Positions 5,670 through 45,980 of a stretch of DNA of 64,000 bases are shown here, one piece after another. The translations under genes were made by a program, and so were the position numbers. Numbering within the stretch: position 1 is the stretch's first letter; each line of letters opens with the position of its first letter. The stretch comes from Squalus acanthias (Eukaryota): contig CM059430.1 in the NCBI GenBank assembly GCA_030390025.1, forward strand, positions 75,392,001 to 75,456,000. The letters are read 5' to 3'. The notes below the pieces were generated by a model. That model was given only the letters and a program-made list of their open reading frames with translations. It did not search any database and was not told the origin of the DNA.

Positions 5670-5724
5670 ATGTTGGCGAGTGCTGTAATTCAGTGCCTCT
5701 CTGTTCTGGGATTCATGTTCACAG
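5670..5724 (+). CDS. Gene 1 exon 1, signal peptide MLASAVIQCLSVLGFMFT
   Basis: ATG at 5670, 18 mostly hydrophobic codons, phase-1 donor ACAG|gtacat. Confidence 0.75.
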
Positions 5725-5894
5725 GTACATGTTGTTTCTATACCTTGCTTTCTCGCTAAAACGCATAGCTGCTTAACATTGTTTGATACAACATGTTTCA
5801 TTGTCCTTTGCACACATTGCCTTACTTACTTACCATCGCGCTTTTCCTTCTGTAATATTCTCACTAATTCGATTTTGATTTTCTTTTCCGAAAG

Positions 5895-6215
5895 GCTCCT
5901 GCGAAACTTCGCTCAAAGTGACTGAGCTCCCTGAAAGCACGAGCGGAATCACAGGTACAAACGTTTCCTTTCATTGCTCGATTGCCTTCTATCAAGACTG
6001 ACCACGGGTGAACGTGTACTGGTGGAAACAGGTTGTTAATAAATATCTAAGCACAGGACCTGATGACAAAAAAGTAAATGGCTCCAAAACTAAATTCAGC
6101 GGCTTCCTTCAGATCATCAATATGAGTTTCGAGGACTCGGGAGTATATTATTGCACTGTCGCCCTTCGAGGCAAAATAGTTGGAAACGGAATGGGATCCA
6201 ATTTAGCTGTCTGGG
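5895..6215 (+). CDS. Gene 1 exon 2, V-set Ig domain with J-like G strand (in-frame TGA 5999-6001)
   Basis: Acceptor ttttccgaaag|. Reads KVTELPESTSGITGTNVSFHC...VYWW...FLQIINMSFEDSGVYYC...GNGMGSNLAVW. Donor G|gtaagt, phase 1/1. Confidence 0.92.
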
Positions 6216-7194
6216 GTAAGTATAAAAGAAGCGGCGAATGAGATCCATGTGACTGCATTATTTCCCACTTCGAAGAAATTCTCGATGTGCTTTGTAGGAT
6301 TCACAAAGCAACTTAAATTCCGGTCGTTTTATGTGTATATATTCAAATTGCACTGTTGACTGCTACACGTTACATGCTAATATGTATTGTAATATTTCAG
6401 CAATATTAATCAAGACGAGCATTATCGGATTCATCCGAAGTACACAGTAAGCATGTATACAACAAGCGTATGAGTTTAAAATTGCAGTGTCCGTTAAGGA
6501 TGTGTATAATGGATAGGAGCGTGTATCCGCCACTGTAAGCACCGATCTTACCCTAGTTACTGGTTTCTTTTGTCTGCTAAAGCTACGGAGGACAGACTGT
6601 TTACATTGGGATTCAGATTAGCACATTCATAATTTAATGGTCTACACGTTAAGACCTTCGAAAACCAAATTGCTAACGGTTAATATCCGCACTCTGTAGC
6701 TTGATCCTCGGACCCCTTATTTTAATCATCATTGAAGCCTCCAGCAAATAAGGTTTCGCACCGGACCTTCGTGCCATAGCCCCTCTATCTTGGGTAAATT
6801 ATACTTCCTCATCAGATGTTATGCTCAACGAGATGGAGTTGGTCCGCAGATGTAACGCAAAGCAAGCGTCAGTGATTCGGCAACCCGATATACAGCACAC
6901 TCAATGTTCTGTAACATTAGAAAAGAAAATCGGCGAGCAGTAAAAGGGTGGCCTATTCGCTGCAATCCGGTTTTCGCCCGGGAAAACCAGTTAAAATTAC
7001 CGCCGATATAAAGTTGACATTTATGAAGATGCCGTTTACGATGTAATTACCAATAGCGCACAGTGAACACCAGGCCCCCACCACTACCCAAACTCCCGGC
7101 CACATTGTGCTGTCAGGAATGGTCTGGAAGAAAGACGATGGGTTGCTAACCTTGAATGATGTCCATGTAACATTCTTTTCCTCCATTTTTCTAG

Positions 7195-7506
7195 TTCCGC
7201 CAACTCCACTGAAAATTGTCTCTAAGGAACCTGAAAACGATTCACTTGCGTCTCTGACTCTACTGTGCACAACATCTCCCTTTTACCCGCAGAATATCAG
7301 CTTCACTTGTTATAAAGATGGAACCAAAATTACAACAAGGATAAGTAACAGTAATCAACCCAACACCGATGGACTATATGAAGCTTCAGGCCGGTTGGAA
7401 GAGTCGCAGACTGTCGAGACCGGGACCGTTTATATCTGCCTGGTGTCTCACAGTGCACTCAAAATTCCAGCCCTGGCTACTCACATTGTCACCTACACGA
7501 ACACAG
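7195..7506 (+). CDS. Gene 1 exon 3, C1-set Ig domain
   Basis: Acceptor tttttctag|. Reads PPTPLKI...LTLLCTTSPFYPQNISFTCYKDG...PNTDGLYEASGRL...YICLVSHSAL (FYP, NxDGxY and YxCxVxH C1 motifs). Donor G|gtaatg. Confidence 0.93.
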
Positions 7507-7519
7507 GTAATGTTTCAGA

Positions 7520-8900
7520 TAGAATCATAGAATCTTACAGCAACGAAAGAGACAATTAGGCCCGGCGTGCCTGTACGGGCTCTTTGAAAGAGCAGTCCTA
7601 TTTAATCCCCACACCAGCTTTTTCCCCATAACTCTGCAAAGTAGTCCTCTTCCAGTACACGTCCAATTGCCTCTTGAAAGTTCCTATGGAAACTGGTTCC
7701 ACCAACCGTTCTGGTAATGCGTTCTGGATCCGAACAATAATTCGTGAGAAAATAATTCTCCTCAATTCGCCTCTAGTATTTAAACAATAATTTTAAGTCT
7801 ATCACTAATGGATACCGACCCATTTTCCAGTGGAAACAGTTTCTCCCTACTTGCTCCATCAAAACCTCTCATAATTTTGAATTTCTCTATAAGGTATCTC
7901 CTTCATCTTCCATGCTCCATGAGAATAATCCCAGCTTCTCCAATCTCTCTACATAACTCCAGGCCCTCATCACTGTTATCATCCTGCTAAACCTCATCTG
8001 TACCCTCTCCAAGAACTTGACACCCTTCCTAAATTGTGCTGCACAGAATTGGCTACAGAACTCCAGCTGAGGACTAGCCTGTGATTTGTAAAGGTTTAGC
8101 ATGACTTCCTTGTTTTTGTATTCACTGCTATATTTACAAAGTCAGTCATCCCATGTGCTTAATAAATCACCTTAACGTCTTGCCCTTCCACCTTCAAAGA
8201 TTTGTCAAATGCACCCCAGTTCCCCAGCCTCTGTAAGCCGCTCAAAATAGAACTATTTGGATTACACTGCCTCTCCATGTTGCTTCACCCACGTGCACAC
8301 TTCACCTGCCCGCATTAAATTGATCCTGACTTGTGCCTGCCCGATTCAACACTCCATCTATGTCCTGCTGAATTCTGCTATTTACTTCTCACTATTTCCT
8401 ATGTTGCCAAGTTTTGCATCATCTGCAAATTTGAAAATATTATTCCCTGTATCCAAGTCCTGGTCCTTTAGGTATATCGTATAAAACATTGGTATTAAGA
8501 CCTATCCATGGGAGATCCAACTGCATAATTCTCTCCAGTCAGAAAAGGCATTCTTTCACCACTGCACTCTGCCTCCTATCACAAAGCCAATTAAGTACCC
8601 AAGGTACCACCATCCCTAAAATTCAATGCGCCTCTATTTGCCGAATAAGTCTATTATGAGGTACTTTATTAAATGACTTTTTAAAATACATATATCTTCT
8701 CAACGACCTTCATCAAACCTCTCTGTTATTTCATTAAAGATCGCAATCAGGTTAATCAGACATGATTTTTATTTAACAAATACATGTTGGCTGTCCCTTA
8801 TTAACCCATGCTTCTCCGAGATAGAATACCAAGAGTTTCTAGTAATGTTCCCACTACTAACGTTAGACTTACTAGACTGTAGTTAACTGGTTTATCTATC
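7520..8900 (-). mobile_element. Old CR1 LINE fragments in the C1-TM intron
   Basis: ORF 7887-8102 (LYKSQASPQLEFCSQF...LERVQMRFSRMI) resembles the CR1 ORF2 C-terminus. Tail atagaatcatagaatc at ~7520. Confidence 0.75.
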
Positions 8901-9616
8901 TCAATTATCGTGCAAGTAAACGGTTTTCTGTGATGCATCCCCCAATCATTTGTTTACTTTTACTCGGATACCATTATCCGTGGGGTTCTGATAGGTGTTG
9001 TGCTCCATGTTCTCTGCAACAGCTGTTAGACATATTCTGCCCCAGTGGAAGTCACGGTCGAGGTGCGGAACTGACGTGTGGGACAGTATCCCGCAGTAAC
9101 TCGCACCCTGTGGTTCCAAGTCGGAACATGTCGGAGCTGGACCGCTGTCTCCAGCATTGCTTAAATCGAGCTTTAATCTTCAGCAAGATGTACATGTAGC
9201 AACTGTCGTCCTTAGCCGTCATATACAACAACAAACTAAACATGATCGAACTGAATTCAGTGGAAATAAAAATGGGAGGTAAATTAAATCAATCTGCCGA
9301 TTGGCTATCGCCCATTTTATAGTAATGCACAATGTCAGAATTAACCGCTGATATCGCAGTCTTATTTAAAGAAGAAACAAGGATACAATCACAGCTGAGT
9401 TTCAGCCAAGATAAAGTAAAATAACTATTATTTAAGCATGAAAAATAAAACAAAGACCAACATTTTTATTTTGTTTCATAAAATTGTAGCTTAATACAAA
9501 AAATAAATGGCAAAAAATATTTAAAATATTTTAATGTTTCTGATTTTTAAGTCATTGTCTAATTGAATTGAACAGTGTAGGGATTCATATTGATATATTT
9601 CATCTCAATCTTAAAG

Positions 9617-9727
9617 GTGGTGAGATCATCCATTACTTGCTGATTTCTGCAAGTGCAGGGGGCGGGTTGGTTGTCCTGGTGCTGGCTGTCATCATTGGGA
9701 AGCAATGTGTCTCAAAGAAAAATAAAG
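9617..9727 (+). CDS. Gene 1 exon 4, transmembrane segment with no charged residue; GC donor
   Basis: Acceptor cttaaag|. Reads GGEIIHYLLISASAGGGLVVLVLAVIIGKQCVSKKNK. Donor AAAG|gcaaga sits where gene 2 has AAAG|gtaagg. Confidence 0.85.
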
Positions 9728-10363
9728 GCAAGAAATAATTTAACACTTTACTAAAGTAAGAACAGTTTTCAAAGAGAGGGTGAGCGAGAACTTCATTTTA
9801 CATGTAGAGAGAAAGTTAGTTGATTGCAACTGAACAGTTCAAAGAGCTTTTACTCTGTCTCACAGGAACAGGGGCGTTTGCTGAACATAACATTGTATAC
9901 TGCGGTTTAAACTATATGGGACGCTTCACAGCCACCCCAGTCTGCTTCATTTATACAAATTGCAGCACCTGATTTATTGACTGTGGGTTTAATCACTGCC
10001 GGTGTAGCGGAAGATTCGAATTTCTAAAATGTGGTGGAATTTTCCGAATTCTCCCAGCCATCTGCAGAGACTGGCGGGATCTTTATTGGAAAATCACTGT
10101 ACATTGATTGTCAGTTTACGCCCATTCGGGACAATGAACGTAGAATTGTGGTAGTGTCCCCGCGATTTTCCAATCAGGATCGCGCAGCTTCCGAGGACCC
10201 AGCCGCATCTGAAAATTCAATTGTCAAAAACAGGTCGGAAACCAACAAATCCTTAAAATGTGATATCTAGATCGTGTTATACTTTACATTGAATCTACCC
10301 GAAGTGTCTTTCCAGGCTGAGTAATTGCCTCATTGTAAAGTCATGAATTTCATTCATTACCAG

Positions 10364-10407
10364 GAGCACAGAACGATGGCGAAAGATCCGACTATCGCGA
10401 ACAGCCG
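10364..10407 (+). CDS. Gene 1 exon 5, short cytoplasmic exon GAQNDGERSDYREQP
   Basis: ttaccag| ... |gtatgt, 44 nt, phase 1 to 0. Same length and phase as the gene 2 exon at 31486-31529. Confidence 0.75.
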
Positions 10408-10689
10408 GTATGTGTGCATGATTCATTGTAATATATCTCAGATATAAACATATACATAACAGTTTTAATCTATTTAAAGCAATAATTTGTCACGTTAAAA
10501 TCTACTGTTCTAAAGATTCATACACAAATAGCGCAGGTTGAATACAGCGCTTATGGGAAGGATTCGTCAATAGGTCAGAGGCAGATGAATTGTAAATGTC
10601 ATCTGCTGATGGCGAATAAGCATATTACTTAAGAGTTACCATAATTAATAATAAAGAACAGTTTTTGCCTCCTGGACAAAGCGGACAGT

Positions 10690-11075
10690 ATGTTGGCGGT
10701 AGTCCATAATGCTGTGCCCATTAACTAACGCTGAACTTAATCCAGAGTACGCGAGTTCAAATCCTATCATTGTAGTTTGAGATTTTGAATTCAGTTTTCA
10801 AAATCTGTAAATAAATGATGTTATCTGCAGAAGAGACCATGAAGCTGTGGGTTTGTCTTAAAACCCAAAGTGGTTCACTAACGTCGCTCAGGGAATGAAA
10901 CCTGCCATTCTTACCCGGTCTGCACTGTATATGACTTCAGTCCACACCAAGGTGGTTGACTCTCAACTTCCCCCTGCAGTCTCCTCTGAATCACGCCACC
11001 AGCAACTTCTGAGGGAAACCAGGAATCGGCAATAAACGCCGCCCTTGCCAGCGATGCCCACATTTCGAGAATTAA
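10690..11075 (+). mobile_element. Degenerate tRNA-derived SINE
   Basis: B-box-like gagttcaaatcc at ~10753. The 3' end (gggaaaccaggaatcggcaataaacgccgcccttgccag) resembles the 3' end of the LINE at 54375-55335. Confidence 0.55.
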
Positions 11076-11685
11076 TACAAATTCTGGCACAATGTCATAG
11101 GCTGACGGTGCCAGTTTAGCTATGTGTTGACCACGCGTGTAACCAGATCACAAAGATGGAATTTTGGGTGAATTTGCGGAAATGTGAAGAAGACGGGGAG
11201 ACAGATGACGATTAATCGGCATTCCCTTCAGTCGCCTCATTTTCCCGTCATAGTATCCAACCTCCAATGTCAACGCCCAACCTTCACCTCCTTGGGCGAA
11301 ACATGCTGATTCACGGCACAGGCTGTGAGACCAAGCAAGCACGGAGATGCTTATCGGGAAATTGAGTGTTATTTGCCCGCCATCTCCTACGTATTGAAAT
11401 CAATAGACAGAAATGAGTTGGCATTAATTCGAGGTGTTCCAATATATAACGACCTTTGCATGTGATTACCGATCGCGGGAAACGTCCGCGAAATTCCAGC
11501 CCATCAAGAGAGTTATTCCAACCAAATCTGATTCGTTCAGTGTATATGTTTTTCCGGATATCTGTTCGACATTTGTTTTCCATTCGTATGCCTAGTTCTA
11601 ATTCATCTCCGTGCTTGCGTCATCAGGGTCTACCTTAAAGTGAAAGACAGATGGATATTGATGTAGATATCAATATATAAATATA

Positions 11686-11723
<38 letters not shown>

Positions 11724-12810
11724 TATAGATGTAGATATAGATATTGTGACATTGTGGATGAATGAAAATCTGCACAAAAGATTCCATGTGTAGTCCAGAT
11801 GCTCAATAAGAAGCTTTAATATAATCTCTTGTTCCATGTTGCGATCCTTTATTCCAGAATTCGATTCGTTGTTTACTTTTCTGGACATTGAAAGTGACCT
11901 GACAACTGTTAACCCCAGACCCCTTTCTGTCTCCTTGTGCTAATTCAATTCCACCCATTGTATAACTACGATACACATTTACCATTATGGCTAAAGCTCA
12001 ATTTTCCAAAGGAGTAAAATGGTTTTATAAAAAAATTCTGCAACGAAGTGTAACTTCAAGTATGGAAACCTTGCCAGATGGAGGTGATTTCAACTAGACT
12101 ACTCCTATCAATGGACTTCAGGGATGAACGTTGATCCCTTATATTTCTTTACTTTCTTAAAATGTAAATTTCGCGGGATTTCCGTAGCTTCGGCGGGACA
12201 TCCGTGCAATTCCCAGAAAAACGACGTAAAGGGCACTTTCAGCCTATTACACCGTTTCTATGGGGCTTCTGGTGGTCACCCAGCAAAGTGAGATCAGGAG
12301 ATCGGTTGTAGCTCCGCGCATTTTTGGGGGTACATTTTCGTCTTTAACGTCTGGGCGCTCAGCAATGCATGGACGGAGCGCAGAAAGGGAAATCTGGTGA
12401 GGAGGACCGCTCGTCCCGAGGGAATTTCTTTGCATTCGTTTCAATGGTAGGAAAATACGCGGGTTCTGTTGCCAGCAGTGGCTCCGCAAGATTTTCCAAT
12501 CCATGCTCAGCCCTGACGATGCTTCAGGTCCAGACGGTAAAGAATAAAACTCCTTTCACTCTGCCCCATCGGTTCCAATATTTGTGCTAATGCGAATGAT
12601 TCCGCCTGCTGGGCACTAACGGCGCAGTCACGGAGCAGAGGCAAGGTGGTTGTGGCAGCAGTGACTGATATTCCATCCATTCATTTAATGGATGGATTCT
12701 GGACCTGCTATTTTCCGGCCTGCTCGCATCGTTCTGCTCAGGGAGGGCCCAAACCTGGTATCTGCCGTAACACCATAACAAACTATATATTTGCCGTTCC
12801 ATCCATGCAG

Positions 12811-12909
12811 GGAGCAGCCGAAGTGATGGCGCCTTATGCCGCATTAGATCTGACCAAGTGCTGGAGAGGTCCAAGACCAAATCATAAAGAGAGGACAGTG
12901 TATGCCCAG
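12811..12909 (+). CDS. Gene 1 exon 6, cytoplasmic tyrosine motifs APYAALDL and TVYAQ
   Basis: Acceptor ccatgcag| in phase 0. Reads GAAEVMAPYAALDLTKCWRGPRPNHKERTVYAQ. Donor CAG|gtagtg. Confidence 0.8.
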
Positions 12910-13140
12910 GTAGTGCTGTGGAGCAGAACATAGAGTCACAGATTACCTGTAATTTATGGGCATGCGAGGTATTGTAAGAAAGACCTTTAATAGTACTATG
13001 GTAATCTTTTATATTTAATTTATAATTTATATCCTCGCTAATTCTGCGAGGATGCAGCTATTCCAATGACTGTGGTAAACATTATACTATAAACAAATAC
13101 AATATCGAAGTAATGATATGCACAAACATTAATTTCACAG

Positions 13141-13308
13141 ACCAAGCAAAGGGCGTCTGATAATAAGTTGACCTACGCTGCTCTAGACATGACAGGCTCC
13201 AAGAAAATAGGAAAGCCTAATTTTAAGGATAAGAGCACGGAGTATGCTCAGCTAGAGATGAAAAATCAAACAGCAGACGTTATTTACACGGAACGAAAAG
13301 CCAAGTAA
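13141..13308 (+). CDS. Gene 1 terminal exon with ITIM LTYAAL and ITSM-like TEYAQL
   Basis: Acceptor tttcacag|. Reads TKQRASDNKLTYAALDMTGSKKIGKPNFKDKSTEYAQLEMKNQTADVIYTERKAK, with TAA at 13306-13308. Confidence 0.85.
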   Translation, partial: TKQRASDNKLTYAALDMTGSKKIGKPNFKDKSTEYAQLEMKNQTADVIYTERKAK

Positions 13309-15829: not shown

Positions 15830-16230
15830 AAAGAACAATGTGGTCCCTTTCAAGGTATCAGGACCTCCTAAAGCGCTTTGCACTCTATACACTAATTTTG
15901 AAGCGTCATTGCTTTAAAGTAGAGAACCCGGCAGCTAATTTTCACACAGCAAGATCCCACAAACAGCAATGAAATAATGACAAGATAATCTCTTTCAGTG
16001 ATGTTCCCGGAGGGATAAATATTGATCAGGATATCCGTTCTTTCAATGGTGTAATGGGATATTTAACGTCCACCTGAGAGGGCATGGAGGGCCCCGGCTT
16101 AATCGCTCATCCAAAAGACCGCACCTCCGAGAGTGCAGCACCCACTGAATACTGCACTGGAATTTCAGCCTAGATTATATGTTCAAAACTAGGGCCGGGT
16201 AGTTGAACCCTCAACCACTGAGCCAAGGTC
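15830..16230 (-). mobile_element. Deu-domain SINE (SacSINE1-like)
   Basis: Same core as 13965-14395 (cacacagcaagatcccacaaacagcaatg...cacctgagaggg...ccaaaagaccgcacctccgagagtgcagcac). Confidence 0.65.
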
Positions 16231-22104: not shown

Positions 22105-22202
22105 ATCCTTATTTTGATGCGGAGATGCCGGTGTTGGACTGGGGTGGACAAAATTGAGAGGTCGCACAGCACCAGGTTATAGTCCAACAGTTTTATTTGA
22201 AA

Positions 22203-22244
22203 TCACAAGCTTTCGGAGCTATCGATTGCTCCTTCCTCAGGTGA
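22203..22244 (-). ncRNA. Minimal type I hammerhead ribozyme motif in the Penelope pLTR
   Basis: Reverse complement of the 24364-24405 motif. Confidence 0.75.
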
Positions 22245-22576
22245 AGTAAATTAGATACAGAATCGCCAAAGTATATATAGATAGAAAACAAAGCATGTGT
22301 ACTTTACAATTGCAGACCACTAAATTAAATCATCCTGACTATCTGCCGAGGTGTGATAAAGTTAATTAAGTCAGCCAGGAAGGTACCACATCAAAGACAT
22401 AGCAAGATACAACTGAGACAATGAGGTGTAGTCGCAGGGGTTCTAACGTGTCAAAAGCTGCCGTCTGTATGTAAAACGAAAAGCTTTAAAAAAAAATTAC
22501 TTTTTTACTGGGAAAATTTTTACTTTTTTACTGGGAATCACATCTGTGAACAAGCTAACGACGACTCGAGTCCGGA

Positions 22577-23980: not shown

Positions 23981-24363
23981 GAAGACGGTCTCAATCGGGA
24001 TCTTGGGTTTATGGCACGATACATGACGTGATCCGGACTCGAGTCGTCGTTAGCTTGTTCACAGATGTGATTCCCAGTAAAAAAGTGAACATTTTCCCAG
24101 TAAAAAATTAATTTTTTTTTAAAGCTTTTCGTTTTACATACAGACGGCAGCTTTTGTCACGTTAGAACCCCTGCGACTACACCTCATTGTCTCAGTTGTA
24201 TCTTGCTATGTCTTTGATGTGGTACCTTCCTGGCTGACTTAATTAACTTTATCACACCTCGGCAGATAGTCAGGATGATTTAATTTAGTGGTCTGCAATT
24301 GTAAAGTACACATGCTTTGTTTTCTATCTATATATGTTTTGGCGATTCTGTATCTAATTTACT

Positions 24364-24405
24364 TCACCTGAGGAAGGAGCAATCGATAGCTCCGAAAGCT
24401 TGTGA
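24364..24405 (+). ncRNA. Minimal type I hammerhead ribozyme motif in the Penelope pLTR
   Basis: tcac-CTGAGGA-a-ggagc(aatcgata)gctcc-GAAA-gctt-gtga contains the CUGANGA and GAAA boxes, stem II, a tcac/gtga stem I and a palindromic AAGCTT stem III. Confidence 0.78.
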
Positions 24406-25072
24406 TTTCAAATAAAACTGTTGGACTATAACCTGGTGTTGTGCGACCTCTCAATTTTATCCTTATTTTGAACATAGGAATGGAAGTGAATGATACCATA
24501 TACGATTCCCACTCTAGTCCGAAGAAAGGCTCGTATTCTAGAGACAGCTTACCTTTCAAGATTTATTGCTGATATAAGTGATTACAAACAAACAACGATG
24601 TCTATCATATATTCAAGGCCAATCATGCTCAGACGCCCCCCGCGCCCCGACTCCAAGATACGCTGCGTTCTACATTTATACTTTTGCCACAACAGACCCA
24701 CTTTTGGTTGTATGATCTAACCCGAGCACCATGTGCTCTCCCTTTGTCTGAAAACCGACTCAAATCTGATTTGCCCAGCTCTGCGATGTGTCACCTGGCT
24801 AGTCTCAACGTGAAACTATTCGGCATCTCTTTTTTCAGATTAAATGGTCTAATGCTTCATTTTCCATGATAACTCCACTCACCCCTCTTTCTTAACTATT
24901 TAAACTGATACACTTCTAAAGTCACGTGATACAAGTTTAATTTAAGATTCTGTTGACAAAGGCCTATTTTTGCGTGAATACAGTTCATTACTTTTTCACC
25001 AGCTGCATTTAATTCTGCTTTTATACTTTATCTTGGTCATGCTGTTTTTGTCACAGATACTTCTCTGACACA

Positions 25073-25375
25073 NNNNNNNNNNNNNNNNNNNNNNNNNNNN
25101 NNNNNNNNNNNNNNNNNNNNNNNNNNNNNNNNNNNNNNNNNNNNNNNNNNNNNNNNNNNNNNNNNNNNNNNNNNNNNNNNNNNNNNNNNNNNNNNNNNNN
25201 NNNNNNNNNNNNNNNNNNNNNNNNNNNNNNNNNNNNNNNNNNNNNNNNNNNNNNNNNNNNNNNNNNNNNNNNNNNNNNNNNNNNNNNNNNNNNNNNNNNN
25301 NNNNNNNNNNNNNNNNNNNNNNNNNNNNNNNNNNNNNNNNNNNNNNNNNNNNNNNNNNNNNNNNNNNNNNNNNNN
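25073..25375. other. Assembly gap (303 N)
   Basis: Run of N. Confidence 0.99.
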
Positions 25376-27094: not shown

Positions 27095-27140
27095 ATGTTT
27101 GTGTGTCACTACATATGGGCGCTTGGGGTTATTTACAACG
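27095..27140 (+). CDS. Gene 2 exon 1, leader MFVCHYIWALGVIYN
   Basis: ATG at 27095, phase-1 donor G|gtattt, 160-nt intron before the V exon (170 nt in gene 1). Confidence 0.65.
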
Positions 27141-27300: not shown

Positions 27301-27612
27301 TTGCTCCCGCTGCAGTTTCCCAAACCCCTGAAAGCACCAGTGTGATGGCAGGTGCAGACATTACGTTCCATTGCAAGACCAGCTCTGTCCAGAATAATTC
27401 AGATGTGAATGTCTATTGGTGGAGACTTGGCGACAATCACTTCATACAACCAGATTCTGACGGCAGGAAACGATTCTCTCCTTTGAAAAACGGAGAGGCT
27501 TCCTTCCAGATCCCGAGTGTCCGTTTCCCAGACTCCGGATCCTATTATTGTGGAGTGAGATACACAGGTAACCCGATGATAAAAGGAGCCGGATCGAAGC
27601 TTGATGTGCACG
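27301..27612 (+). CDS. Gene 2 exon 2, intact V-set domain with J-like G strand
   Basis: Acceptor tttttacag|. Reads VSQTPESTSVMAGADITFHC...VNVYWWR...RKRF...ASFQIPSVRFPDSGSYYC...IKGAGSKLDVH. Donor G|gtaagc. Confidence 0.93.
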
Positions 27613-27769: not shown

Positions 27770-28720
27770 TATGTTAAGTATCTCTGGGCTCCAGGACAAT
27801 ATACAGAAGGATCTGAATCCAAAGAATGTGGCAGCAATAGGGACCTTGATTTATTGGCTGTCGATAAAGAAGAAATAAGTTTGTACAAGATATTGGCTGG
27901 GCCGCACCTTGAATCCTGTGTGAAAATCTAGCACAAAAGTGGCATGGGACTATGCAAACTTTCGTCTTCAAGTATATATCCACATTCCGTTTTGAAAGTT
28001 ACGACTGAATCTGCATCCACCAGCCTTTCAGGCAGTTCAATCCAAATCATAAAAACTCGCTGTGCAAAAAAGCATTCTACACATCTCGCAATTATCTTAA
28101 ATCTGTGCCCATCTGCCACTGGAAAGGATTTCTGTGTATTTACTATATCAAAGCCTCTCATCATTTTGCACACCTTAATACATCCCCCCTTAACTTTCCC
28201 TACTCTAAGCACAACAATTGCAGCTTATCTAGCATCTCCATGCAACTGAAGTCCCTCGTCCCTGGTATCATTCTAGTAAATCTCTTCTGCACCCTCTCCA
28301 AGTCTTGACATCCTTCCTAAAACGTTATGCCCAGAATGGACACAATACTCCAGATGAGTCCTAACCAGTGATGTATACACGTTTAACTGAACATCCTTGC
28401 TTTTGTACTCTATGTCTCTGTTTATAAAGTGTCGATAGTGGTCATGATGCGGAGATGCCGGTGTTGGACTGGGGTGGACAAAATTGAGAGGTCGCACAAC
28501 ACCAGGTTATAGTCCAACAGTTTTATTTGAAATCACAAGCTTTCGGAGCTATCGATTGCTCCTTCCTCAGGTGAAGTCTTCACCTGAGGAAGGAGCAATC
28601 GATAGCTCCGAAAGCTTGTGATTTCAAATAAAACTGTTGGACTATAACCTGGTGTTGTGCGACCTCTCAATTCTGTTTATAAAGCCATGGATACCATATG
28701 CTTGTTCTGCCACCTTCAAA
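27770..28720 (-). mobile_element. Old CR1 fragment(s) in the V-C1 intron, host of the mini-Penelope
   Basis: ORFs 27928-28212 (FFAQRVFMIW) and 28273-28497 (IEYKSKDVQLNVYTSLVRTHLEYCVH). Confidence 0.7.
28430..28672. mobile_element. Non-autonomous palindromic Penelope derivative with a hammerhead on each strand; 13-bp TSD
   Basis: 95-bp inverted arms at 28482-28576 and 28578-28672 with a 1-nt loop, matching the pLTR ends of 22118-24458. tctgtttataaag occurs at 28417-28429 and 28672-28684. Confidence 0.9.
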
Positions 28721-29796: not shown

Positions 29797-30104
29797 CTTC
29801 ACCAGAACCCGTGAGACTGGACCCCAAAGTGTCCGGAACCGACACATCTACTCTAACACTTGTGTGTGAAACGGCCGAGTTCTAACCGGAGGCTCTCACC
29901 TTCACTTGTTATAAAAATAACACCAACATTGTTACTGGGATCAACACCATTATTAGCAGAATTCGGAGGGAATGTATGAAGCTTCCAGCAGATTGGAAAC
30001 GACACAGCCAGCCCAGAGCGGGGCTGTATATACCTGTGTGGTGTCTCACCTCACACTGCAGAGTCCAGCCGTGGCTGTTTACTTTGATTCCAGTTCTAAC
30101 ACAG
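29797..30104 (+). pseudogene. Gene 2 exon 3, disrupted C1-set domain
   Basis: Acceptor ttccacag|. Reads SPEPVRL...LTLVCETAEF*PEALTFTCYKN...[shift]QNSEGMYEASSRL...YTCVVSHLTLQSP. Donor G|gtaaga. 308 nt, not a multiple of 3. Confidence 0.9.
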
Positions 30105-30914: not shown

Positions 30915-31028
30915 GCAATGGACTCCCATCCCTTCCGCTACTAATTGCTGGATGTACAGGGGGTGCACTGATATTTCTAGCCATCATCACTTTCATTGGG
31001 AACAGTTACCAACTCAGTAACTGTAAAG
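30915..31028 (+). CDS. Gene 2 exon 4, transmembrane (uncharged)
   Basis: Acceptor ttttag|. Reads GNGLPSLPLLIAGCTGGALIFLAIITFIGNSYQLSNCK. Donor G|gtaagg. Confidence 0.87.
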
Positions 31029-38326: not shown

Positions 38327-39103
38327 AGTGAGTGGGCAGTAACATGACAGATGGAATATAACGTGGATAAATGTGAAGTTATACACTTCGGTAGAAAAAA
38401 ACAGAAAGGCAGAGTATTTCCTAAATGGTGATAGATTGGGGAATGCAGATGCTCAAAGGGTCCTGGGTGTCCTTATACATGAATCACTGAACGTGAATGT
38501 GCAGGTGCAGCAATCCATTAGGAATGCAAATGATATGCTGTCCTTCATTTCAAGAGGATTTGAGTACAGGAGCAAAGAACTCTTACTCCAATTATATAGG
38601 GCCTTGGTGAGACCACACCTGGAGTACTGTGTACAATTTTGTTCACCTTACTTAGGGAAGGATAAACTTGTCATAGAGGGAGTGCAACGAAGGTTCACGA
38701 GATTGATTCCTGGGATGGCAGAACTGTCGTATGAGAAGAGATTGAGTAAACTCGGCCTGTATTCTCTTGAATTCAGAAGAATGAGAGGGGATCTCTTTGA
38801 AGCATACAAAATTATTAAAGGGCTTGATAGGGTGGATGCTGGGAGAATATATCCCTTGACTGGGGAGTATAGAACCAGGGGCCACAACGTCAGGATAAAG
38901 GGTAGGCCACTCAAGACTGAGATGAGAAGAAATTTCTTCACACAGATTGTGGTGAATCTATGGAATTCTCTACCCCAGAGGGCTGTGGAGGCTCTGTCAT
39001 TGGGTATATTCAAAACAGAAGTCGATAGATGTCTCACTAGTAAGGGCATCAAGGGATATGGCGATAGGGCCGGTGAATGGAGTTGAGGCAGAAGATCAGC
39101 CAT
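38327..39103 (+). mobile_element. CR1 ORF2 C-terminal fragment
   Basis: ORF 38373-39086 LLQLYRALVRPHLEYCVQF...RMRGDLFEAYKI...NLWNSLPQ. Confidence 0.92.
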
Positions 39104-41215: not shown

Positions 41216-41427
41216 GATAAGAACATAAGAACATAAGAAATAGGAGCAGGAGTAGGCCAATCGGCCCCTCGAGCCTGCTCCGCCATTCAATATGATCATG
41301 GCTGACCTGATCCTAACCTCAAATCTAAAGAACACAAGAAGTAGGAGCAGGACCCGGCCACACAGCCCCTGGGCCCGCTCTGCCACCCACAGGGCCTTGA
41401 CCGATCCGAACTCAGCCTCATGTCCAA
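41216..41427 (-). mobile_element. Short CR1 3'UTR-only insertion (same subfamily as 44783-45803)
   Basis: (aacataag)n tail plus the distinctive cacacagcccctgggcccgctc...gaccgatccgaact segment. Confidence 0.75.
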
Positions 41428-43329
41428 TAAGAGTTAAAGACCGATCACCTTTACTGTGTATCGTAATATAGGAAGTACAGGAAAATAGAAACAGCAGTAG
41501 GCCATTCAGCCCCTCAAGCCTGTTCCACCATTCATTTACAACATGGCTGACATGGATCTTAACTTCATCTACCCGCCTTGGTTACGTAACCCTTAATACA
41601 TTTGCCGAACAAGTATCTCAGGTTTCTCCTCATAACTGTAATTTCTAATCCCTGGCACCTCGGTGGATCCATTCTGTACGCTCTCCATATGACAGGAATG
41701 CCTGTACAAATGTCTCGTGCTTCCTCGAAAATTGTTGTTGTGAACCAGAGGAGAAAGGAGGTTGCTTAACACCAATGCTTACCCATAAATCTTTTAGAAC
41801 CAGTTGTTTAAATCGTGTAATAATGTTGATCATAAATATTGTAATATCCTGATTGTGAAACAGGATTTGTTGCTATAGTTTAGTTCCTTCAGCTAGTGCA
41901 AAATCAGCTGCACAATAAAATATTTCAGAAACGCAGCTTAAAAACCCAAGCTTGGCGTCAATTGGTTATTTTTTCCGATTCATGTCCCCTTCTTTTCAAA
42001 CTTGGCGCTGCCCTGCTCTCAGGTCTTATCTTTCATTTGAGAACGTCGGTATCTGCTGACAATACTGCAACTCATCTCCTTGAGAAGTGTGCGTTTTCCA
42101 AAACATGTAAATATCAAAGATCTCAATAAAGTGATCCGGGCGGTGAGATACCTACCACGGACCGCACCCCACACCCCCACCCCACGGGGACTATTGCTTT
42201 GTCTAAGTTCTGGAGACATTTCGTTCATGTATCCAAAATACAAACCTTTGGGCAGTATTTTGAGTGAGACTACCAGACTGCCAGGGTTATTTAATATGCA
42301 TTGCACTAAACAAACAGGCAAGATAAGGCAGCTGGATGTGATTTAATATTCAACAAATTCTAGGGCATCAAGATTTCTGTGGGCTGCCGCTCATTAGTCA
42401 ATCCTATCTGCCGACCAGGGAATAAGCACCAAGGTAACTGAGAGTAATGGAGTTGTAAATACTCAATAATGAATCTTATATATATATACATATGAAGGCG
42501 AAGGACAAAAGTGAGCTTGAGTCGACCCACCAACCTGCCCTGCCCCGGCTTTCCTGTCTCCTAATGTAAAGTTCCTCATTATCTTCTGTCCTCATGAAGG
42601 TGAGGGCAGTAAATCCTGCTGAATGCAACTCGTCCCCCGTGAGACATCGGGGTTACATCTACGTATTTAGTCAGTGGGCTGAGGGCAGGAAGGAAATCTG
42701 TCGGGGAAGTTCACACGCCCTTAAGGGAACCCGTAGGATGTTCGACCCGTTAATGTCAATCGGAGGAAAATCCGACGAATTCTCTTCTGCTGTATAAATG
42801 TCACCGTTAGATTTAGCTTGCTGTGCTCCGCTAAGGAAATGCTCAGCCCAAACCGACGGAAGTACACCGACAAACATCGTGTAAACATAGTGCTCTTTTT
42901 GTCACTGCAGTTCAAGCTACCCAGTGTAGGACTGATAATAACATTTTCTGTGTTGAAAGATCATTCCCAATTTAACTCCTTCCAAGACTCTTCGTTAAGA
43001 AGACATTGAATAAGAGAGTCTCCGTTGTTCAGAGTGACTAGCGGTATAAGCAAATTTGATACGTGGTTAGCCAGTGGGCTGTCGATAACGCCGGGACAAA
43101 TTCCATCCCGTAAGTGCTCTTAGAAACATACGCACAAGAGGAGACAATTCAACCCATTCAGCATATTCCACTATTCAATTATATCATGGCTTATCTGTAC
43201 CTTAACTCTCTGTATCGGGCTTTTTTTTACAGCCCTTGATCCTCCAACATTCTACATCATCCAAGGTGCATGTATATTGTCACCTAACACAACACAGACA
43301 AGCTTATCCTCCAAAAAGAAATGTTCGCT

Positions 43330-43970
43330 GTGAGCCTCCCCCCACCATATCATTTGTTTACTTTTACTCAAATACCATTATCCGTTGAATTCTACCCGGT
43401 GTCCGGCTCCAAGCCTCTGTAACTGCTGTTCCGCCACCTCTATCCCAGATATAGAACTGATCCTTGGGGCAATATCGGACACTAACTCGCGTTCTGTCAT
43501 TCCAAGCCGCAATGCGCCGGAGCAGAACCGCCATAACCCGTGCACACAATGAGCAGCAAACTGTCATTTTAGCGAGAGCTATTATACATTTCAACATAGT
43601 AACAAAGTAATTATTATCACACTGAAGTCAATGGAAATAAAAATCGGGTGTGTGGTAAGAACAGGCTTTCGATACACTATCGTCCAAATTACAATTACAC
43701 GCTTATATCGCAGTTAGATATCAACAAGAAAGCAGGTTACGGCAAGATAATGTAGAAACAAATGTTCTCCAAGCATTACATTAAACAAAGCTCAGCACTT
43801 TTTTATTTTGTTTCATAAAACTATACCTTAAATGTAAATGCACTAAAATAGCAACAATTACTTAAAATGTTTCTGATCTTTTAGGTCACGATATTGTTCA
43901 AATGTGCCGTGTACTGCCTCATATTTATACCTTTCATCTAAATCTTGTAGGTGGTGAGATCACCCGTTAT
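43330..43970 (+). pseudogene. Remnant of a third receptor gene: C1-TM intron plus first codons of the TM exon
   Basis: Aligns by eye with 8930-9635 (atcatttgtttacttttactc; tttttattttgtttcataaaa; catctaaatcttgtag|gtggtgagatcacccgtta vs catctcaatcttaaag|gtggtgagatcatccatta). It then turns abruptly into RTE sequence. Confidence 0.8.
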
Positions 43971-44656
43971 GGACCGGGGTCAAGCAAGGCTGTGTCATCG
44001 CACCAACGCTCTTCTCGATCTTCCTGGCAGCAATGCTCCATCTCACCCTCAGTAAGCTCCCCACTGGAGTGGAGCTAATCTATAGAACAAATGGGATACT
44101 GTTCAAACTCCGTCACCTCCAGTCCAGATCCAAGGTCGTCCAGTCCTCTGTCATCGAATTACAGTATGCAGACGATGCTTGCATCTGCGCACACTCTGAG
44201 TTCGAACTCCAAACCATCATCAACACCTTCACCGAAGCGTATGAGAGCATGGGCCTTAGACTAAACATCCGTAAGACAAAGGTCCTCTACCAACCAGCCC
44301 CCGCCACACAGTACCACTCCCCGATTATCAAAATCCATGACGAGGCCTTGAACAATGTGGGCCACTTTCCATACCTCGGGAGCCTACTGTCAACAAGTGC
44401 AGACATCGCTGACGAAGTCCAACAGCACCTTCAGTGTGCCAGTGCAGCCTTTGGTCACCTGAGGAAGAGAGTGTTTGAAAACCAGTACCTCACACCCAGC
44501 ACCAAGCTCATGGTCTACAGAGCAGTAGTGATACCCGCCCATGTATGCTTCAGAGACATGGACCATGTATAGCAGGAGCCTCAAAGCACTGGAGAGGTAC
44601 CACCAACGCTGCCTCCGCAAGATCCTGCAAATCCATTGGCAGGACAGGCACACCAA
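43970..44656 (+). mobile_element. RTE-clade LINE RT fragment, copy 1
   Basis: ggggtcaagcaaggctgtgtcatcgcacca (GVKQGCVIAP). ORF 44033-44572 ELQYADD...GLRLNIRKTKVL...FPYLGS. Confidence 0.9.
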
Positions 44657-44782
44657 ATTCAGGCTTTCGATACACTATCGTCCAAATTACAATTACACGC
44701 TTATATCGCAGTTTGATATCAACAAGAAAGCAGGTTACGGCAAGATATTGTAGAAACAAATGTTCTTCAAGCATAACATTAA

Positions 44783-45803
44783 ACATAAGAACATAAGAAC
44801 ATAAGAAATAGGAGCAGGAGTAGGCCAATCGGCCCCTCGAGCCTGCTCCGCCATTCAATAAGATCATGGCTGATCTGATCCTAACCGCCAATCTACTATC
44901 TATCACAGAACCATCTCCTGCATCTAACAGAATTGCACACACGAAATAGGAGCAGAATCAGGCTACACAGTCCCTGGGCCCGCTCCACTACCCACAGGGC
45001 CATGACCGAACCGAACCTAGACTCATGTCCAAATTCCTGCCCGCTCCCCGTAACCCTTAATGCCCTTTACTTCTAGGAAACTGTCTATTTCTGTTTTAAA
45101 TTTAATTAATGTTGTAGCTTCTACAGCTTTTTGTGGCAGCATATTCCATGGACCTACCACCCTCTGAGTGAAGTAGTTCCTCCTCATCTCAGTTTTGAAA
45201 GAGCAGCCCCTTATTCTAAGACTATGTCCCCTAGTTCTCGTCTCACCCGTCATCGGGAACATCCTCCCCGCATCCACCCGATCCAACCCCTTCACAATCT
45301 TATATGTTTCAATAAGATCGCCTCTCATTCTTCTGAACTCCAATGAGTAGAGTCCCAATCTACCCAACCTCTCCTCATATGACCACCCCCTCATCCCCGG
45401 GATTAACCGAGTGAACCTTTTTTGCACTGCCTCGAGAGCAAGGATGTCTTTCCTTAAGTAAGGACACCAAAACTGTATGCAGTCTTCCAGGTGCGGTCTC
45501 ACCAATACCTTGTACAACTGAAGCAATACCTCCCTATTTTTATATTCTATCCCCCTAGCAATGAAAGCCAACATTCCATTTGCCTTCTTAATCACTTGCT
45601 GCACCTGCATACTAACCTTTTGAGTTTCGTGCACCAGGACCCCCAGATCCCTTTGCACTTCAGTACTCTCCAGTTTCTTGCCATTAAGATAATAAATTGC
45701 TCTAGGATTTTTCCTGCCAAAGTGCATCACCTCACACTTTCCAGTGTTGTATTCCATCTGCCAAATCTCTGCCCACTTACTTAGCCTGTCTATGTCCCCT
45801 TGC
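44783..45803 (-). mobile_element. Young 5'-truncated CR1 with open ORF2 C-terminus
   Basis: Uninterrupted 244-aa ORF 45023-45757 and an (aacataag)n tail. It splits sequence that is contiguous at 43780-43800. Confidence 0.92.
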
Positions 45804-45980
45804 TCGGCACTTTTTATTTTGTTTCATAAAACTATACCTTACATGTAAATGCACTAAAATAGCAACAATTACTTAAAATGTTTCTGATCTTTTAGGTCAC
45901 GATATTGTTCAAAGGTGCCGTGTACTGCCTCATATTTATACATTTCATCTAAATCTTGTAGGTGGTGAGATCACTCGTTA
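45803..45980 (+). pseudogene. Duplicate of the TM-exon remnant (intron end plus GGEITRY)
   Basis: Near-identical to 43790-43970. Confidence 0.8.

What the first reader, a model, noticed from the sequence alone, without database searches (positions are those of the whole stretch)
5670..45980. Tandem cluster of non-rearranging VJ-C1 (antigen-receptor-like) membrane receptor genes in a cartilaginous fish
Seen: at least three same-strand paralogs. Two show leader / V / C1 / TM / cytoplasmic exons in identical phases. Each V exon carries its own J-like G-x-G-S-x-L-x-V strand (GNGMGSNLAV, KGAGSKLDV) and splices to a single C1-set domain, and no RSS flanks the V exons. Established: V(J)+C1 is the unit of Ig light chains and TCR chains; C1 domains are otherwise largely confined to Ig/TCR, MHC/B2M, tapasin, SIRP and some B7 members; mammalian SIRPs are V-C1-C1 and NKp30 is V-only. 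Inference: this is a diversified innate receptor family with TCR/IgL-like ectodomains and inhibitory tails, possibly uncharacterised and relevant to the pre-RAG ancestor of antigen receptors.
Basis: partly seen in the sequence, partly recalled or inferred. Interest (0 to 1): 0.9.

Follow-up and report, generated by a model that had tools for sequence, protein, structure and literature searches.

The report
Shark SIRP-like VJ-C1 receptor genes
Two neighbouring, apparently damaged copies (plus a fragment of a third) of a large shark, ray and chimaera family of immune-receptor genes that resemble mammalian SIRP receptors and antibody light chains; the family sits in public annotations under inconsistent names, and I found no study of it.

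Summary
The V and C1 exons are real, not chance: Pfam V-set 2.4e-11 and C1-set 2.9e-11. Each V exon carries its own J-like strand, and no RSS lies nearby. The window holds two genes, not three. The "third" is a LINE-truncated relic with no V or C1 exon.

Both genes are defective in this assembly. Gene 1 (5670-13308, ITIM/ITSM tail) has an in-frame TGA in its V exon. All 7 of 7 DNA contigs from two other samples read G there, which gives Gly, so the stop may be private to this haplotype. Gene 2 has a TAA and a frameshift in C1, and no ITIM tail exon was found.

Both belong to a multigene family seen in 19 chondrichthyan species. RefSeq annotates it inconsistently (SIRP-alpha-like, tapasin-related-like, Ig-lambda-like and others). 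The family has inhibitory, Arg-TM activating and short-tailed forms.

Among solved structures, SIRP-alpha (64.7 bits per V-C1 unit) ties with Ig light chains (63.2) and beats UrIg2 (49.2). I read it as a SIRP-like paired-receptor family with a single C1 domain. None of my seven literature searches found a paper on it.

The scan's first readers noted similar genes elsewhere in this genome. Interest is moderate. The link to a pre-RAG ancestor is speculative, and UrIg/UrIg2 already fill that role in print.

The parts
5670..5724 (+). Gene 1 leader exon (ATG at 5670, 18 codons + 1 nt, phase 1, GT donor)
   Evidence: Sequence read. 74% identical to the leader of Heterodontus protein P0188.
5895..6215 (+). 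Gene 1 VJ exon (321 nt, phase 1-1) with an in-frame TGA at 5999-6001 and the J-like strand GNGMGSNLAV at 6182-6211
   Evidence: V-set; family HMM 1.2e-22 and 6.2e-06 for the two pieces; the stop replaces Gly of P0188/P0189. In one search, 7 of 7 contigs read G at 5999.
7195..7506 (+). Gene 1 C1-set exon (312 nt, phase 1-1). The reading frame is intact, but the family's invariant Trp is Cys (TGT 7308-7310).
   Evidence: C1-set 2.9e-11; 3.7e-40; W in 69 of 69 family rows.
9617..9727 (+). Gene 1 transmembrane exon (111 nt, phase 1-1, no charged residue). The donor is GC (9728-9729), not GT.
   Evidence: (6.3e-08).
12811..12909 (+). Gene 1 cytoplasmic exon A (33 codons, phase 0-0): ..APYAAL.. and ..TVYAQ
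   Evidence: 8e-05; 62% to P0188.
13141..13308 (+). Gene 1 last coding exon B: ..LTYAALDM.., ..TEYAQL.., ..VIYTER.., stop TAA at 13306-13308
   Evidence: 2e-13; 6e-16.
25073..25375 (.). Assembly gap (N), intergenic between gene 1 and gene 2; not filled
27095..27140 (+). Gene 2 leader exon (15 codons + 1 nt, phase 1)
   Evidence: MFVCHYIWALGVIY against P0001 MSMCQCVWALGIIY.
27301..27612 (+). Gene 2 VJ exon (312 nt, phase 1-1), intact, with the J-like strand KGAGSKLDV at 27582-27608
   Evidence: V-set 2.4e-11; 71% to P0001; 6.1e-36.
29797..30104 (+). Gene 2 C1-set exon, broken. It has TAA at 29883-29885 (Tyr in relatives), a 1-nt loss between about 29946 and 29959 (308 nt against 312), and Trp to Cys (TGT 29907-29909).
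30915..31028 (+). Gene 2 transmembrane exon (114 nt, phase 1-1, neutral TM, GT donor). Read-through gives a stop after 9 more codons. No ITIM exon was found downstream.
   Evidence: (7.8e-05).
43328..43969 (+). Relic of a third, gene-1-type paralogue. It is the distal C1-TM intron plus the acceptor and the first ~24 nt of a TM exon, then cut by a LINE. There is no V or C1 exon.
45811..45981 (+). Duplicate of the relic's 3' part, within a ~2-kb tandem duplication that includes the LINE
   Evidence: The duplicated 179-aa RT ORFs at 44033 and 46044 are.

Best explanation
The window holds two tandem, same-strand members of a large chondrichthyan multigene family, plus a LINE-truncated relic of a third. 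The family encodes non-rearranging type I membrane receptors built as follows: a split leader, a V domain with a germline J-like strand (family consensus NGTGSxLxV), a single C1-set domain, a transmembrane segment and a tail.

The family comes in three signalling designs.
- Long tails with paired ITIM/ITSM-like tyrosines (..YAxLN.. ..ERTVYAQTKQ.. ..NKLTYAALDL.. ..TEYAxL).
- A conserved Arg-containing TM with a very short tail.
- A neutral TM with a short tail.

This is the logic of a paired-receptor system such as SIRP-alpha/beta/gamma. I infer the following mechanism; none of it is shown here. The V domain binds a ligand. Inhibitory members recruit SH2 phosphatases after tyrosine phosphorylation. 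Arg-TM members couple to an ITAM adaptor. Short-tailed members act as non-signalling or adhesion forms.

Gene 1 is an inhibitory-type member of a lineage shared by sharks and rays. In this assembly it carries a nonsense codon in V. That codon reads as Gly in contigs from other individuals, so it is probably a null allele (or an assembly error) rather than a fixed pseudogene. Gene 2 belongs to a short-tailed lineage and is a pseudogene here, or at best a V-only form made by skipping the symmetric C1 exon. This pattern fits birth-and-death evolution of an innate immune receptor cluster in repeat-rich DNA.
For: DOMAINS AND EXON STRUCTURE
-.

FAMILY MEMBERSHIP
- The V2 exon finds 359 proteins at E<=1e-3. 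The best is 71% identical over V.
- Gene 1's exons are 63-77% identical to Heterodontus P0188. Gene 2's exons are 56-87% identical to P0001.
- The family HMM hits every exon.

TAXONOMIC SPREAD
- 46 of 46 hits and 68 of 70 hits are chondrichthyan.
- 20 of 20 named family-type representatives are chondrichthyan. In total 19 species, including a chimaera.

OLD LINEAGES
- Gene 1's V falls in a 9-row clade with sharks and batoids (SH-aLRT 100). Gene 2's V falls in a 4-row clade (98).
- Gene 1's C1 falls in a 9-row clade (99).

THREE SIGNALLING DESIGNS
- 28 of 71 models have a TM plus a 69-153 aa tail with 1-3 [SIVLTAP]xYxx[LVI] motifs.
- 8 have the (H/P)(R/Q)F(I/V)L...(D/E/V)H TM with a tail of 3-19 aa.
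- Gene-2-type models P0001 and P0178 were typed with a neutral or near-neutral TM (P0178's window includes one Lys) and a 16-23 aa tail. P0193 was not typed by the script, but its sequence ends shortly after its TM.

CLOSENESS TO SIRP
- The family profile against PDB puts SIRP-alpha third and SIRP-gamma sixth of more than 10,000 matches.
- Per V-C1 unit: SIRP-alpha 64.7 bits, lambda 63.2, kappa 63.2, UrIg2 49.2. SIRP-alpha d3 scores 46.2 bits against the C1 part.
- The two nearest named ESM-Atlas clusters are SIRP-alpha-like (0.96; 205 and 204 of 256 features).

STOP CODON
- All 7 of 7 contigs over position 5999, in 3 DNA runs from 2 samples and 2 studies, read G.
- Relatives have Gly at that position.
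Against: - There is no expression evidence. The only run guessed to be RNA covered 9 of 30 bins, all in repeats.
- Ligand, adaptor and phosphatase coupling are inferred from motifs alone.
- The contigs laid at 90% likeness may include paralogues. Depth over the V exon is about 20 times that of a single-copy bin, so the G at 5999 may not be this locus's allele.
- Gene 1 also has a Cys for the invariant C1 Trp, 2 of 13 conserved V columns changed, and a GC donor. It may be decaying anyway.
- The SIRP affinity is not exclusive. Ig light chains score the same. With the V exon alone, SIRP is absent from the best 60 PDB rows. The named non-chondrichthyan V relatives are NITR-like, NKp30, kappa-like and A33-like.
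- Tail-only searches were blank. The likeness of the tail to SIRP-alpha's four tyrosines rests on my recall of the human sequence.
- ITIM tails of the LxYAAL type also occur in a teleost NITR-like hit (P0130).
Confidence: 0.8

Rival explanations
1. These are true co-orthologues of the tetrapod SIRP genes. The family descends from the same ancestral gene as SIRP-alpha/beta/gamma. The difference in C1 number is either a loss in cartilaginous fish or a duplication of the C1 exon in bony vertebrates.
For: - SIRP-alpha has the best per-unit V-C1 score among solved structures. Its d3 is the best single C1 match, including the VPPT hinge.
- The two nearest named Atlas clusters are SIRP-alpha-like.
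- RefSeq's most frequent name for family members is SIRP-alpha-like.
- The same three signalling designs occur.
- Tail motif order matches, by my recall of SIRP-alpha.
Against: - The score is a tie with Ig light chains.
- There is one C1 domain, not two.
- No tetrapod SIRP appears among the best 150 V relatives; this holds for the 30 of those 150 whose names I looked up.
- A 2026 survey places the origin of the SIRP family at Tetrapoda (PMC13262535, table passage seen).
Confidence: 0.35
2. This is an independent chondrichthyan family. It derives from an antigen-receptor-like or UrIg-like VJ-C1 gene and acquired common ITIM/ITSM tail exons and an Arg-TM exon convergently or by exon shuffling. 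It has no special relation to SIRP.
For: - The single C1 exon's best PDB match is UrIg2 (7.5e-15, summed over three domains).
- The V exon's best PDB matches are Ig light-chain V domains.
- LxYAAL...VYxQ tails occur in a teleost NITR-like protein too.
- All exons are phase 1-1, so shuffling would be easy.
Against: - With the family profile, UrIg2's V-C1 unit scores lower (49.2 bits) than SIRP-alpha (64.7).
- UrIg and UrIg2 have three to nine C domains (PMC12227049).
Confidence: 0.35
3. These are germline-joined immunoglobulin light-chain or TCR genes, or pseudogenes of them. Germline-joined Ig genes are known to occur in sharks (recalled).
For: - NCBI names several members 'immunoglobulin lambda-1 light chain-like'.
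- The V-C1 unit aligns with lambda and kappa chains at 63 bits.
Against: - TM and cytoplasmic exons are conserved across 19 species.
- The residue before G-x-G is Asn, not Phe/Trp.
- Identity to Ig V is low. E is 1e-6 to 1e-8 for the V exon, against 1e-39 within the family.
- There is no RSS.
Confidence: 0.03
4. Gene 2 is not dead. It makes a V-only, short-tailed membrane protein by skipping the broken C1 exon.
For: - The V, C1 and TM exons are all phase 1-1, so V-to-TM splicing keeps the frame.
- The V exon violates 0 of 13 conserved columns.
- RefSeq has V-TM models without C1 in this family (P0082, P0136, P0139).
Against: - There is no RNA evidence.
- The C1 exon still has good splice sites, so inclusion and nonsense-mediated decay would be expected.
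- The V-TM models may be prediction artefacts.
Confidence: 0.15

Closest known systems
SIRP family (SIRP-alpha/beta/gamma) of mammals
   Same: - The N-terminal V domain has a germline J-like G strand. SIRP-alpha's KSGAGTELSV aligns with the family's NGTGSxLxV.
- C1-set domains lie below the V domain.
- The same three designs occur: inhibitory tyrosine tail, basic-TM activating form, and short-tailed form (the SIRP side is from the abstract of PMC12975943, seen in the listing).
- SIRP-alpha has the best-scoring V-C1 unit among solved structures.
   Different: - There is one C1 domain instead of two.
- There are many ancient lineages and dozens of genes per genome.
- The activating TM has Arg near the outer face plus Asp/Glu-His near the inner face. 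SIRP-beta instead has a Lys (recalled).
- There is an N-glycosylation sequon inside the J-like strand.
- CD47 binding is untested.
UrIg / UrIg2 (non-rearranging shark VJ-C1 genes; PMC12227049)
   Same: - A single-exon VJ domain with a split leader, followed by C1-type domains.
- Elasmobranch origin.
- The window's C1 exon has UrIg2 as its best PDB match.
   Different: - UrIg has three C domains and is secreted. UrIg2 has nine C domains (passages seen).
- The family here has one C1 domain, a TM, and ITIM or Arg-TM signalling modules.
- The profile score to UrIg2's V-C1 unit is lower than to SIRP-alpha.
Immunoglobulin light chains and TCR chains
   Same: The V(J)-C1 unit is shared. Lambda and kappa score 63.2 bits against the family profile.
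   Different: V and J are contiguous in one exon with no RSS. There are TM and signalling exons. Asn stands in place of the Phe/Trp before G-x-G.
NITR (teleost novel immune-type receptors) and NKp30/NCR3
   Same: - Joined-VJ V domains.
- They are among the nearest named non-chondrichthyan V relatives: Clarias 'immune-type receptor 15a' and Leptodactylus NCR3.
- ITIM tails of the LxYAAL type occur in P0130.
   Different: They have no C1-set domain.
PRARP (Fu et al. 2019; not held in the library, so features are recalled)
   Same: Non-rearranging VJ IgSF genes with ITIM-type tails. PRARP is cited with NKp30 as a VJ gene in PMC10751288 and listed with SIRP in PMC11599192.
   Different: As I recall it, PRARPs have a single V domain and no C1, and they were reported from bony vertebrates.

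Membership tests
SIRP family | N-terminal V-set domain whose exon includes a J-like G strand | tested here: met
   Pfam V-set. The J-like strands lie inside the V exons. SIRP-alpha's GAGTELSV aligns with the family motif.
SIRP family | Three-domain ectodomain V-C1-C1 | tested here: not met
   There is only one C1 exon between V and TM in both genes. The family models are V-C1.
SIRP family | Paired signalling forms: inhibitory four-tyrosine tail, basic-TM activating form, short-tailed form | tested here: met
   This is met at motif level only. Gene 1's tail has APYAAL, TVYAQ, LTYAAL, TEYAQL and VIYTER. Function was not tested. The comparison with human SIRP-alpha's tail is from recall.
SIRP family | Sequence closer to SIRP than to other IgSF families | tested here: inconclusive
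   SIRP-alpha scores 64.7 bits against 63.2 for lambda and kappa. The Atlas's nearest clusters are SIRP-alpha-like. With V alone, SIRP is absent from the best 60 PDB rows.
SIRP family | CD47 binding; conserved synteny with the tetrapod SIRP locus | not testable with these tools
UrIg / UrIg2 | VJ domain followed by three or more C1-type domains; secreted (UrIg) or nine C domains (UrIg2) | tested here: not met
   There is a single C1 exon, then a TM exon. The UrIg features come from passages of PMC12227049.
UrIg / UrIg2 | Linkage to the MHC (UrIg) or to the IgH/TCR-alpha-delta complex (UrIg2) | not tested
   The only lead is that the scan's MHC notes all lie on other sequence pieces of this genome. 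These are unchecked AI notes.
Rearranging antigen receptors (Ig/TCR) | Separate V and J segments flanked by RSS | tested here: not met
   V and J are contiguous in one exon. No RSS with 4 or fewer mismatches lies near the V exons.
PRARP | Ectodomain of a single VJ domain without a C domain (recalled; paper not held) | tested here: not met
   A C1-set exon is present in both genes.
NITR | V(J) domain with or without an I-type second domain, no C1-set domain; teleost (recalled) | tested here: not met
   The second domain is C1-set at E 2.9e-11.
B7 / butyrophilin (NCBI names: CD276 homolog, NCR3LG1-like) | Closest sequence relatives are B7 members | tested here: not met
   CD276 appears only at about 2e-05 (C1 exon) and about 4e-06 to 7e-06 (V exon). 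It is absent from the best 60 rows of the family-profile search, all of which are at or below 1.3e-20.

The most novel reading that the evidence does not exclude
This family may be the membrane-bound, signalling counterpart of UrIg. On that reading it is a surviving lineage of the ancestral two-domain VJ-C1 receptor that predates the split of cartilaginous and bony vertebrates. Both SIRPs (by C1 duplication) and the single V-C1 chains of Ig light chains and TCRs (by RAG invasion of a relative) would then descend from it. This would move the origin of the SIRP-type paired-receptor system from tetrapods to the base of jawed vertebrates.
Probability: 0.15. Interest if true: 0.8.

Novelty: new variant of a known kind. 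Interest (0 to 1): 0.45.

Why it matters
Joined-VJ plus C1 genes are the class of molecules from which rearranging antigen receptors are thought to have arisen. Sharks have already supplied the best published candidates, UrIg and UrIg2.

A second VJ-C1 family that is much larger, membrane-bound and found across cartilaginous fish would matter for three reasons.
- It would show that SIRP-type paired receptors are older than a recent survey states. That survey places the SIRP family at Tetrapoda (PMC13262535, passage seen).
- It would give comparative immunologists a tractable family for asking what VJ-C1 ectodomains bound before, or alongside, adaptive receptors.
- It would let RefSeq's five or more inconsistent names for the same family be corrected.

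The two copies in this window are themselves ordinary. They are defective members of a birth-and-death cluster.

Tried and rejected
LED NOWHERE
- Tail-only homologue search (P0006 residues 288-377): it found only itself among 48 candidates.
- Tail-only Atlas search: no usable hit.
- Family-profile search for bony-vertebrate relatives: only two weak teleost hits.
- Search for gene 2 tail exons and for the small cytoplasmic exon(s) between gene 1's TM exon and exon A: none found.
- Search for the rest of the relic's TM exon: none found.
- HMM of the family's Arg-TM exon against the window: nothing. The best E was 0.87, on an unrelated stretch.
- Rfam at gathering score: 0 matches in the window.

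LITERATURE
- Seven searches found no paper on a chondrichthyan SIRP-like VJ-C1 family.
- Most subscription journals are not held. The two most relevant J Immunol papers (UrIg 2023 and PRARP 2019) could not be read. Supplements were not opened.
- A description could therefore exist that I could not see.

CONSIDERED AND REJECTED
- Chance ORFs: the E-values rule this out.
- Germline-joined IgL or TCR: the family has TM and tail exons, and identity to Ig V is low.
- B7 family: only distant matches.
- A degenerate C1 exon at 24416-24490 next to the gap: HMM E 1.4, and the surrounding frames are not Ig-like.
- The CACAGTG site at 7059: it has 3 mismatches and lies in the V-C1 intron, not at a V end.
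- Short gene conversion as the cause of the shared Trp-to-Cys: the 16-nt identical run around it is not clearly longer than other conserved runs. This is left unexplained.

NOT DONE
- A deep phylogeny with SIRP, Ig, TCR, UrIg and tapasin was not done. No tool gave me those sequences, and I may not type them from memory.
- Gene 2's lesions were not checked against reads, because the one read-laying run went to gene 1.

Full report
WHAT IS IN THE WINDOW

The region is repeat-rich vertebrate DNA with many reverse-transcriptase fragments. A six-frame scan and tblastn found exactly two V-type and two C1-type exons, all on the + strand. Pfam calls the intact V exon (27303-27611) V-set at E 2.4e-11. 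It calls the intact C1 exon (7188-7490) C1-set at E 2.9e-11. The broken exons match the same models more weakly.

Reading the DNA and aligning to the closest database proteins gives these gene models.
- Gene 1: leader 5670-5724, VJ 5895-6215, C1 7195-7506, TM 9617-9727, cytoplasmic exon A 12811-12909, and last exon B 13141-13308.
- Gene 2: leader 27095-27140, VJ 27301-27612, C1 29797-30104, TM 30915-31028.

The leader/V, V/C1 and C1/TM junctions are phase 1 in both genes. An RSS scan found nothing with 4 or fewer mismatches within 300 bp of either V exon.

1. There is no third gene with V or C1 exons.
   - tblastn with 33 family proteins gave 14 hit clusters. Seven are the exons of genes 1 and 2. 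The other seven come only from the retrotransposon-like N-terminus of one RefSeq model, P0012.
   - A family HMM against all 2,735 stop-free stretches of 15 aa or more gave 11 hits at E<=5e-4, all in the two genes. The next hit was E 1.4.
   - What exists is a relic. 43328-43969 is collinear with gene 1's C1-TM intron (8928-9636), including the acceptor and about 24 nt of the TM exon. After that a LINE begins. Its 3' part is duplicated at 45811-45981.
2. Gene 1's V exon has an in-frame TGA at 5999-6001.
3. Gene 2's C1 exon has a TAA where relatives have Tyr, and it is 308 nt rather than 312 nt long, which shifts the frame.
4. Only gene 1 has tyrosine-motif tail exons. None was found for gene 2. 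Its closest relatives are short-tailed models.
5. In both genes the C1 Trp is Cys (TGT), although it is Trp in 69 of 69 other family rows. I cannot explain this shared change.
6. Gene 1's TM exon has a GC donor.

THE ASSEMBLY GAP

The gap at 25073-25375 lies between the genes and touches no exon or frame. The tandem order depends on that scaffold join.

IS GENE 1 REALLY DEAD?

The one read-laying run laid Logan contigs of four runs on 5600-9760.
- All contigs that cover position 5999 read G, which gives GGA (Gly). That is 1 contig in X1, 4 in X2 and 2 in X4, from two samples and two studies. The T of the assembly was not seen.
- The closest relatives have Gly exactly there: FFQDGP in P0188 and P0189.

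The stop is therefore a G-to-T change that is private to the assembled haplotype, or an assembly error. One caveat applies. Contigs were accepted from 90% likeness, and summed depth over the V exon is about 20 times that of a clean single-copy bin. Some of these contigs may therefore be paralogues.

The one run guessed to be RNA covered only repeat bins (9 of 30), so there is no expression evidence either way. Gene 2's lesions could not be checked against reads.

WHAT FAMILY IS IT?

The V2 exon, searched against 1.84 billion representatives, found 359 proteins at E<=1e-3. The best was 71% identical.
- The family-type hits I looked up (20 of 20) are from chondrichthyans.
- So are all 46 hits of a full-length member, and 68 of 70 hits of a 20-sequence profile. 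The other two are weak teleost Ig-domain hits.
- In all I saw 19 species: sharks, rays, skates, a sawfish and the chimaera Callorhinchus.
- The NCBI names are inconsistent: SIRP-alpha-like (the commonest), tapasin-related-like, Ig lambda-1-like, NCR3LG1-like, CD276 homolog and SIRP-beta-1-like.
- In each species where a contig was on record, the listed hits sit on one chromosome-scale contig. For example, about 24 clusters at 90% identity sit on one 99.65-Mb Heterodontus contig.

The alignment of 20 full-length members gives the family plan. It starts with V ending in NGTGSxLxV, then the VPPTPL hinge, then C1. A TM follows, often opening GCAxGG. The tail reads ..YAxLN....EERTVYAQTKQ....NKLTYAALDL....TEYAxL. 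Gene 1's exons A and B fit that tail consensus closely.

V and C1 trees (IQ-TREE quick search, about 105 columns, so deep forks are unresolved) give these placements.
- Gene 1 falls in a 9-row clade that holds Heterodontus, Scyliorhinus, Mobula, Hemitrygon, Amblyraja and Leucoraja (SH-aLRT 100 for V, 99 for C1).
- Gene 2's V falls in a 4-row clade with Heterodontus, Mustelus and Pristis (98).

The two window genes therefore represent different lineages, each older than the shark-ray split.

SIGNALLING DESIGNS

Typing 71 models showed three designs.
- 28 have a TM and a 69-153 aa tail with 1-3 ITIM/ITSM-like motifs.
- 8 have a conserved TM of the form (H/P)(R/Q)F(I/V)L...III(V/M/A)(D/E/V)H and a tail of 3-19 aa. 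This is the hallmark of adaptor-coupled activating receptors.
- Others have a neutral TM and a short tail, and gene 2 is of this type.
- The rest are partial or TM-less models.

This is the architecture of a paired-receptor family. That inhibitory members recruit SH2 phosphatases, and that Arg-TM members pair with an ITAM adaptor, is inferred from motifs and established receptor biology. It is not shown here.

COMPARISON WITH KNOWN FAMILIES

The family profile matched more than 10,000 distinct PDB sequences at E<=1e-6. The top three are an IgA1 heavy chain entry (2rcj_C) whose matched stretch is a lambda V-C unit, UrIg2, and SIRP-alpha. SIRP-gamma is sixth.

Bit scores per V-C1 unit:

| Structure | Bits |
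|---|---|
| SIRP-alpha d1-d2 | 64.7 |
| Ig lambda | 63.2 |
| Ig kappa | 63.2 |
| UrIg2 | 49.2 |

SIRP-alpha d3 is also a strong match to the C1 part (46.2 bits) and shares the VPPT hinge. The two nearest named ESM-Atlas clusters are SIRP-alpha-like (0.96), ahead of kappa-like (0.94).

Against a SIRP-specific reading stand these results.
- The V exon alone prefers Ig light-chain V domains.
- The C1 exon alone prefers UrIg2.
- The named non-chondrichthyan V relatives are NITR-like, NKp30, kappa-like and A33-like proteins.

I therefore describe the family as SIRP-like in how it probably works. I do not file it as a SIRP member, because the V-C1-C1 architecture is not met and orthology is untested.

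LITERATURE

- UrIg and UrIg2 are published as non-rearranging shark VJ-C1 genes and candidates for the gene invaded by RAG. For PMC12227049 I saw the abstract and passages. For PMC10751288 I saw passages.
- SIRP is listed with CD79, NITR, CD8, NKp30 and PRARP as joined-VJ IgSF members (PMC11599192, passage seen).
- A 2026 survey table places the SIRP family at Tetrapoda (PMC13262535, passage seen).
- None of seven searches turned up a description of this chondrichthyan family. The UrIg 2023 and PRARP 2019 papers are not held, and I did not open supplements.

EARLIER NOTES OF THIS SCAN

The scan's first readers flagged similar VJ-C1 genes with SIRP-like tails. They lie 22.7 kb and 113 kb before this window, and 7-13.5 Mb away on the same piece. 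This agrees with a large clustered family, but I did not check those loci. Their MHC notes all lie on other pieces.

VERDICT

The family-level idea is sound and apparently undescribed in print, but it is a variant of a known kind: SIRP-type joined-VJ/C1 paired receptors. The two copies in this window are defective, and the pre-RAG link is speculative.

Synteny and fold comparison were therefore not done.

Noticed in passing
window 7308-7310 and 29907-29909: Both C1 exons encode Cys (TGT) at the position of the Ig-fold Trp, which is Trp in 69 of 69 other family rows. The two genes belong to different old lineages. The shared change is unexplained; it could be short gene conversion, a species trait or decay.
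   Followed up: partly
window 9728-9729: Gene 1's TM exon ends with a GC (G|GCAAG) donor rather than GT. Read-through would give a short-tailed protein (..KNKGKK stop).
   Followed up: no
window 6188-6199 and 27588-27599: The family's J-like strand carries an N-glycosylation sequon (NGT in NGTGS). Both window genes have lost it (NGMGS, KGAGS). A glycan on the G-strand bulge would argue against Ig-type V-V pairing; this is an inference.
   Followed up: no
window 22115-22247, 24361-24462, 28445-28676: Near-identical (98-100%) copies of a ~100-130-bp palindromic repeat lie on both sides of the assembly gap and after gene 2's V exon. Rfam at gathering score found nothing in the whole window.
   Followed up: partly
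An HMM of the family's conserved Arg-TM exon gave no match at this place, so similarity does not support it.
   Followed up: partly
window 43736-47135: A ~2-kb tandem duplication carries a 5'-truncated LINE (179-aa RT ORFs at 44033 and 46044) together with the receptor relic it interrupted.
   Followed up: partly
window 7059-7096: A perfect CACAGTG heptamer with a 22-nt spacer and a 6/9 nonamer sits in the V-C1 intron of gene 1. It is one of two sites with 3 or fewer mismatches in 64 kb, is not at a V end, and I take it as chance.
   Followed up: partly
protein P0012 (Heterodontus francisci XP_067905015): The first ~150 residues of this RefSeq model are retrotransposon RT-like and hit LINE copies across the window. 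It is probably a mis-fused gene model.
   Followed up: no
proteins P0082, P0136, P0139: Some family models go from V straight to TM and an ITIM tail without C1. These may be V-only isoforms made by skipping the symmetric C1 exon, or prediction artefacts.
   Followed up: no
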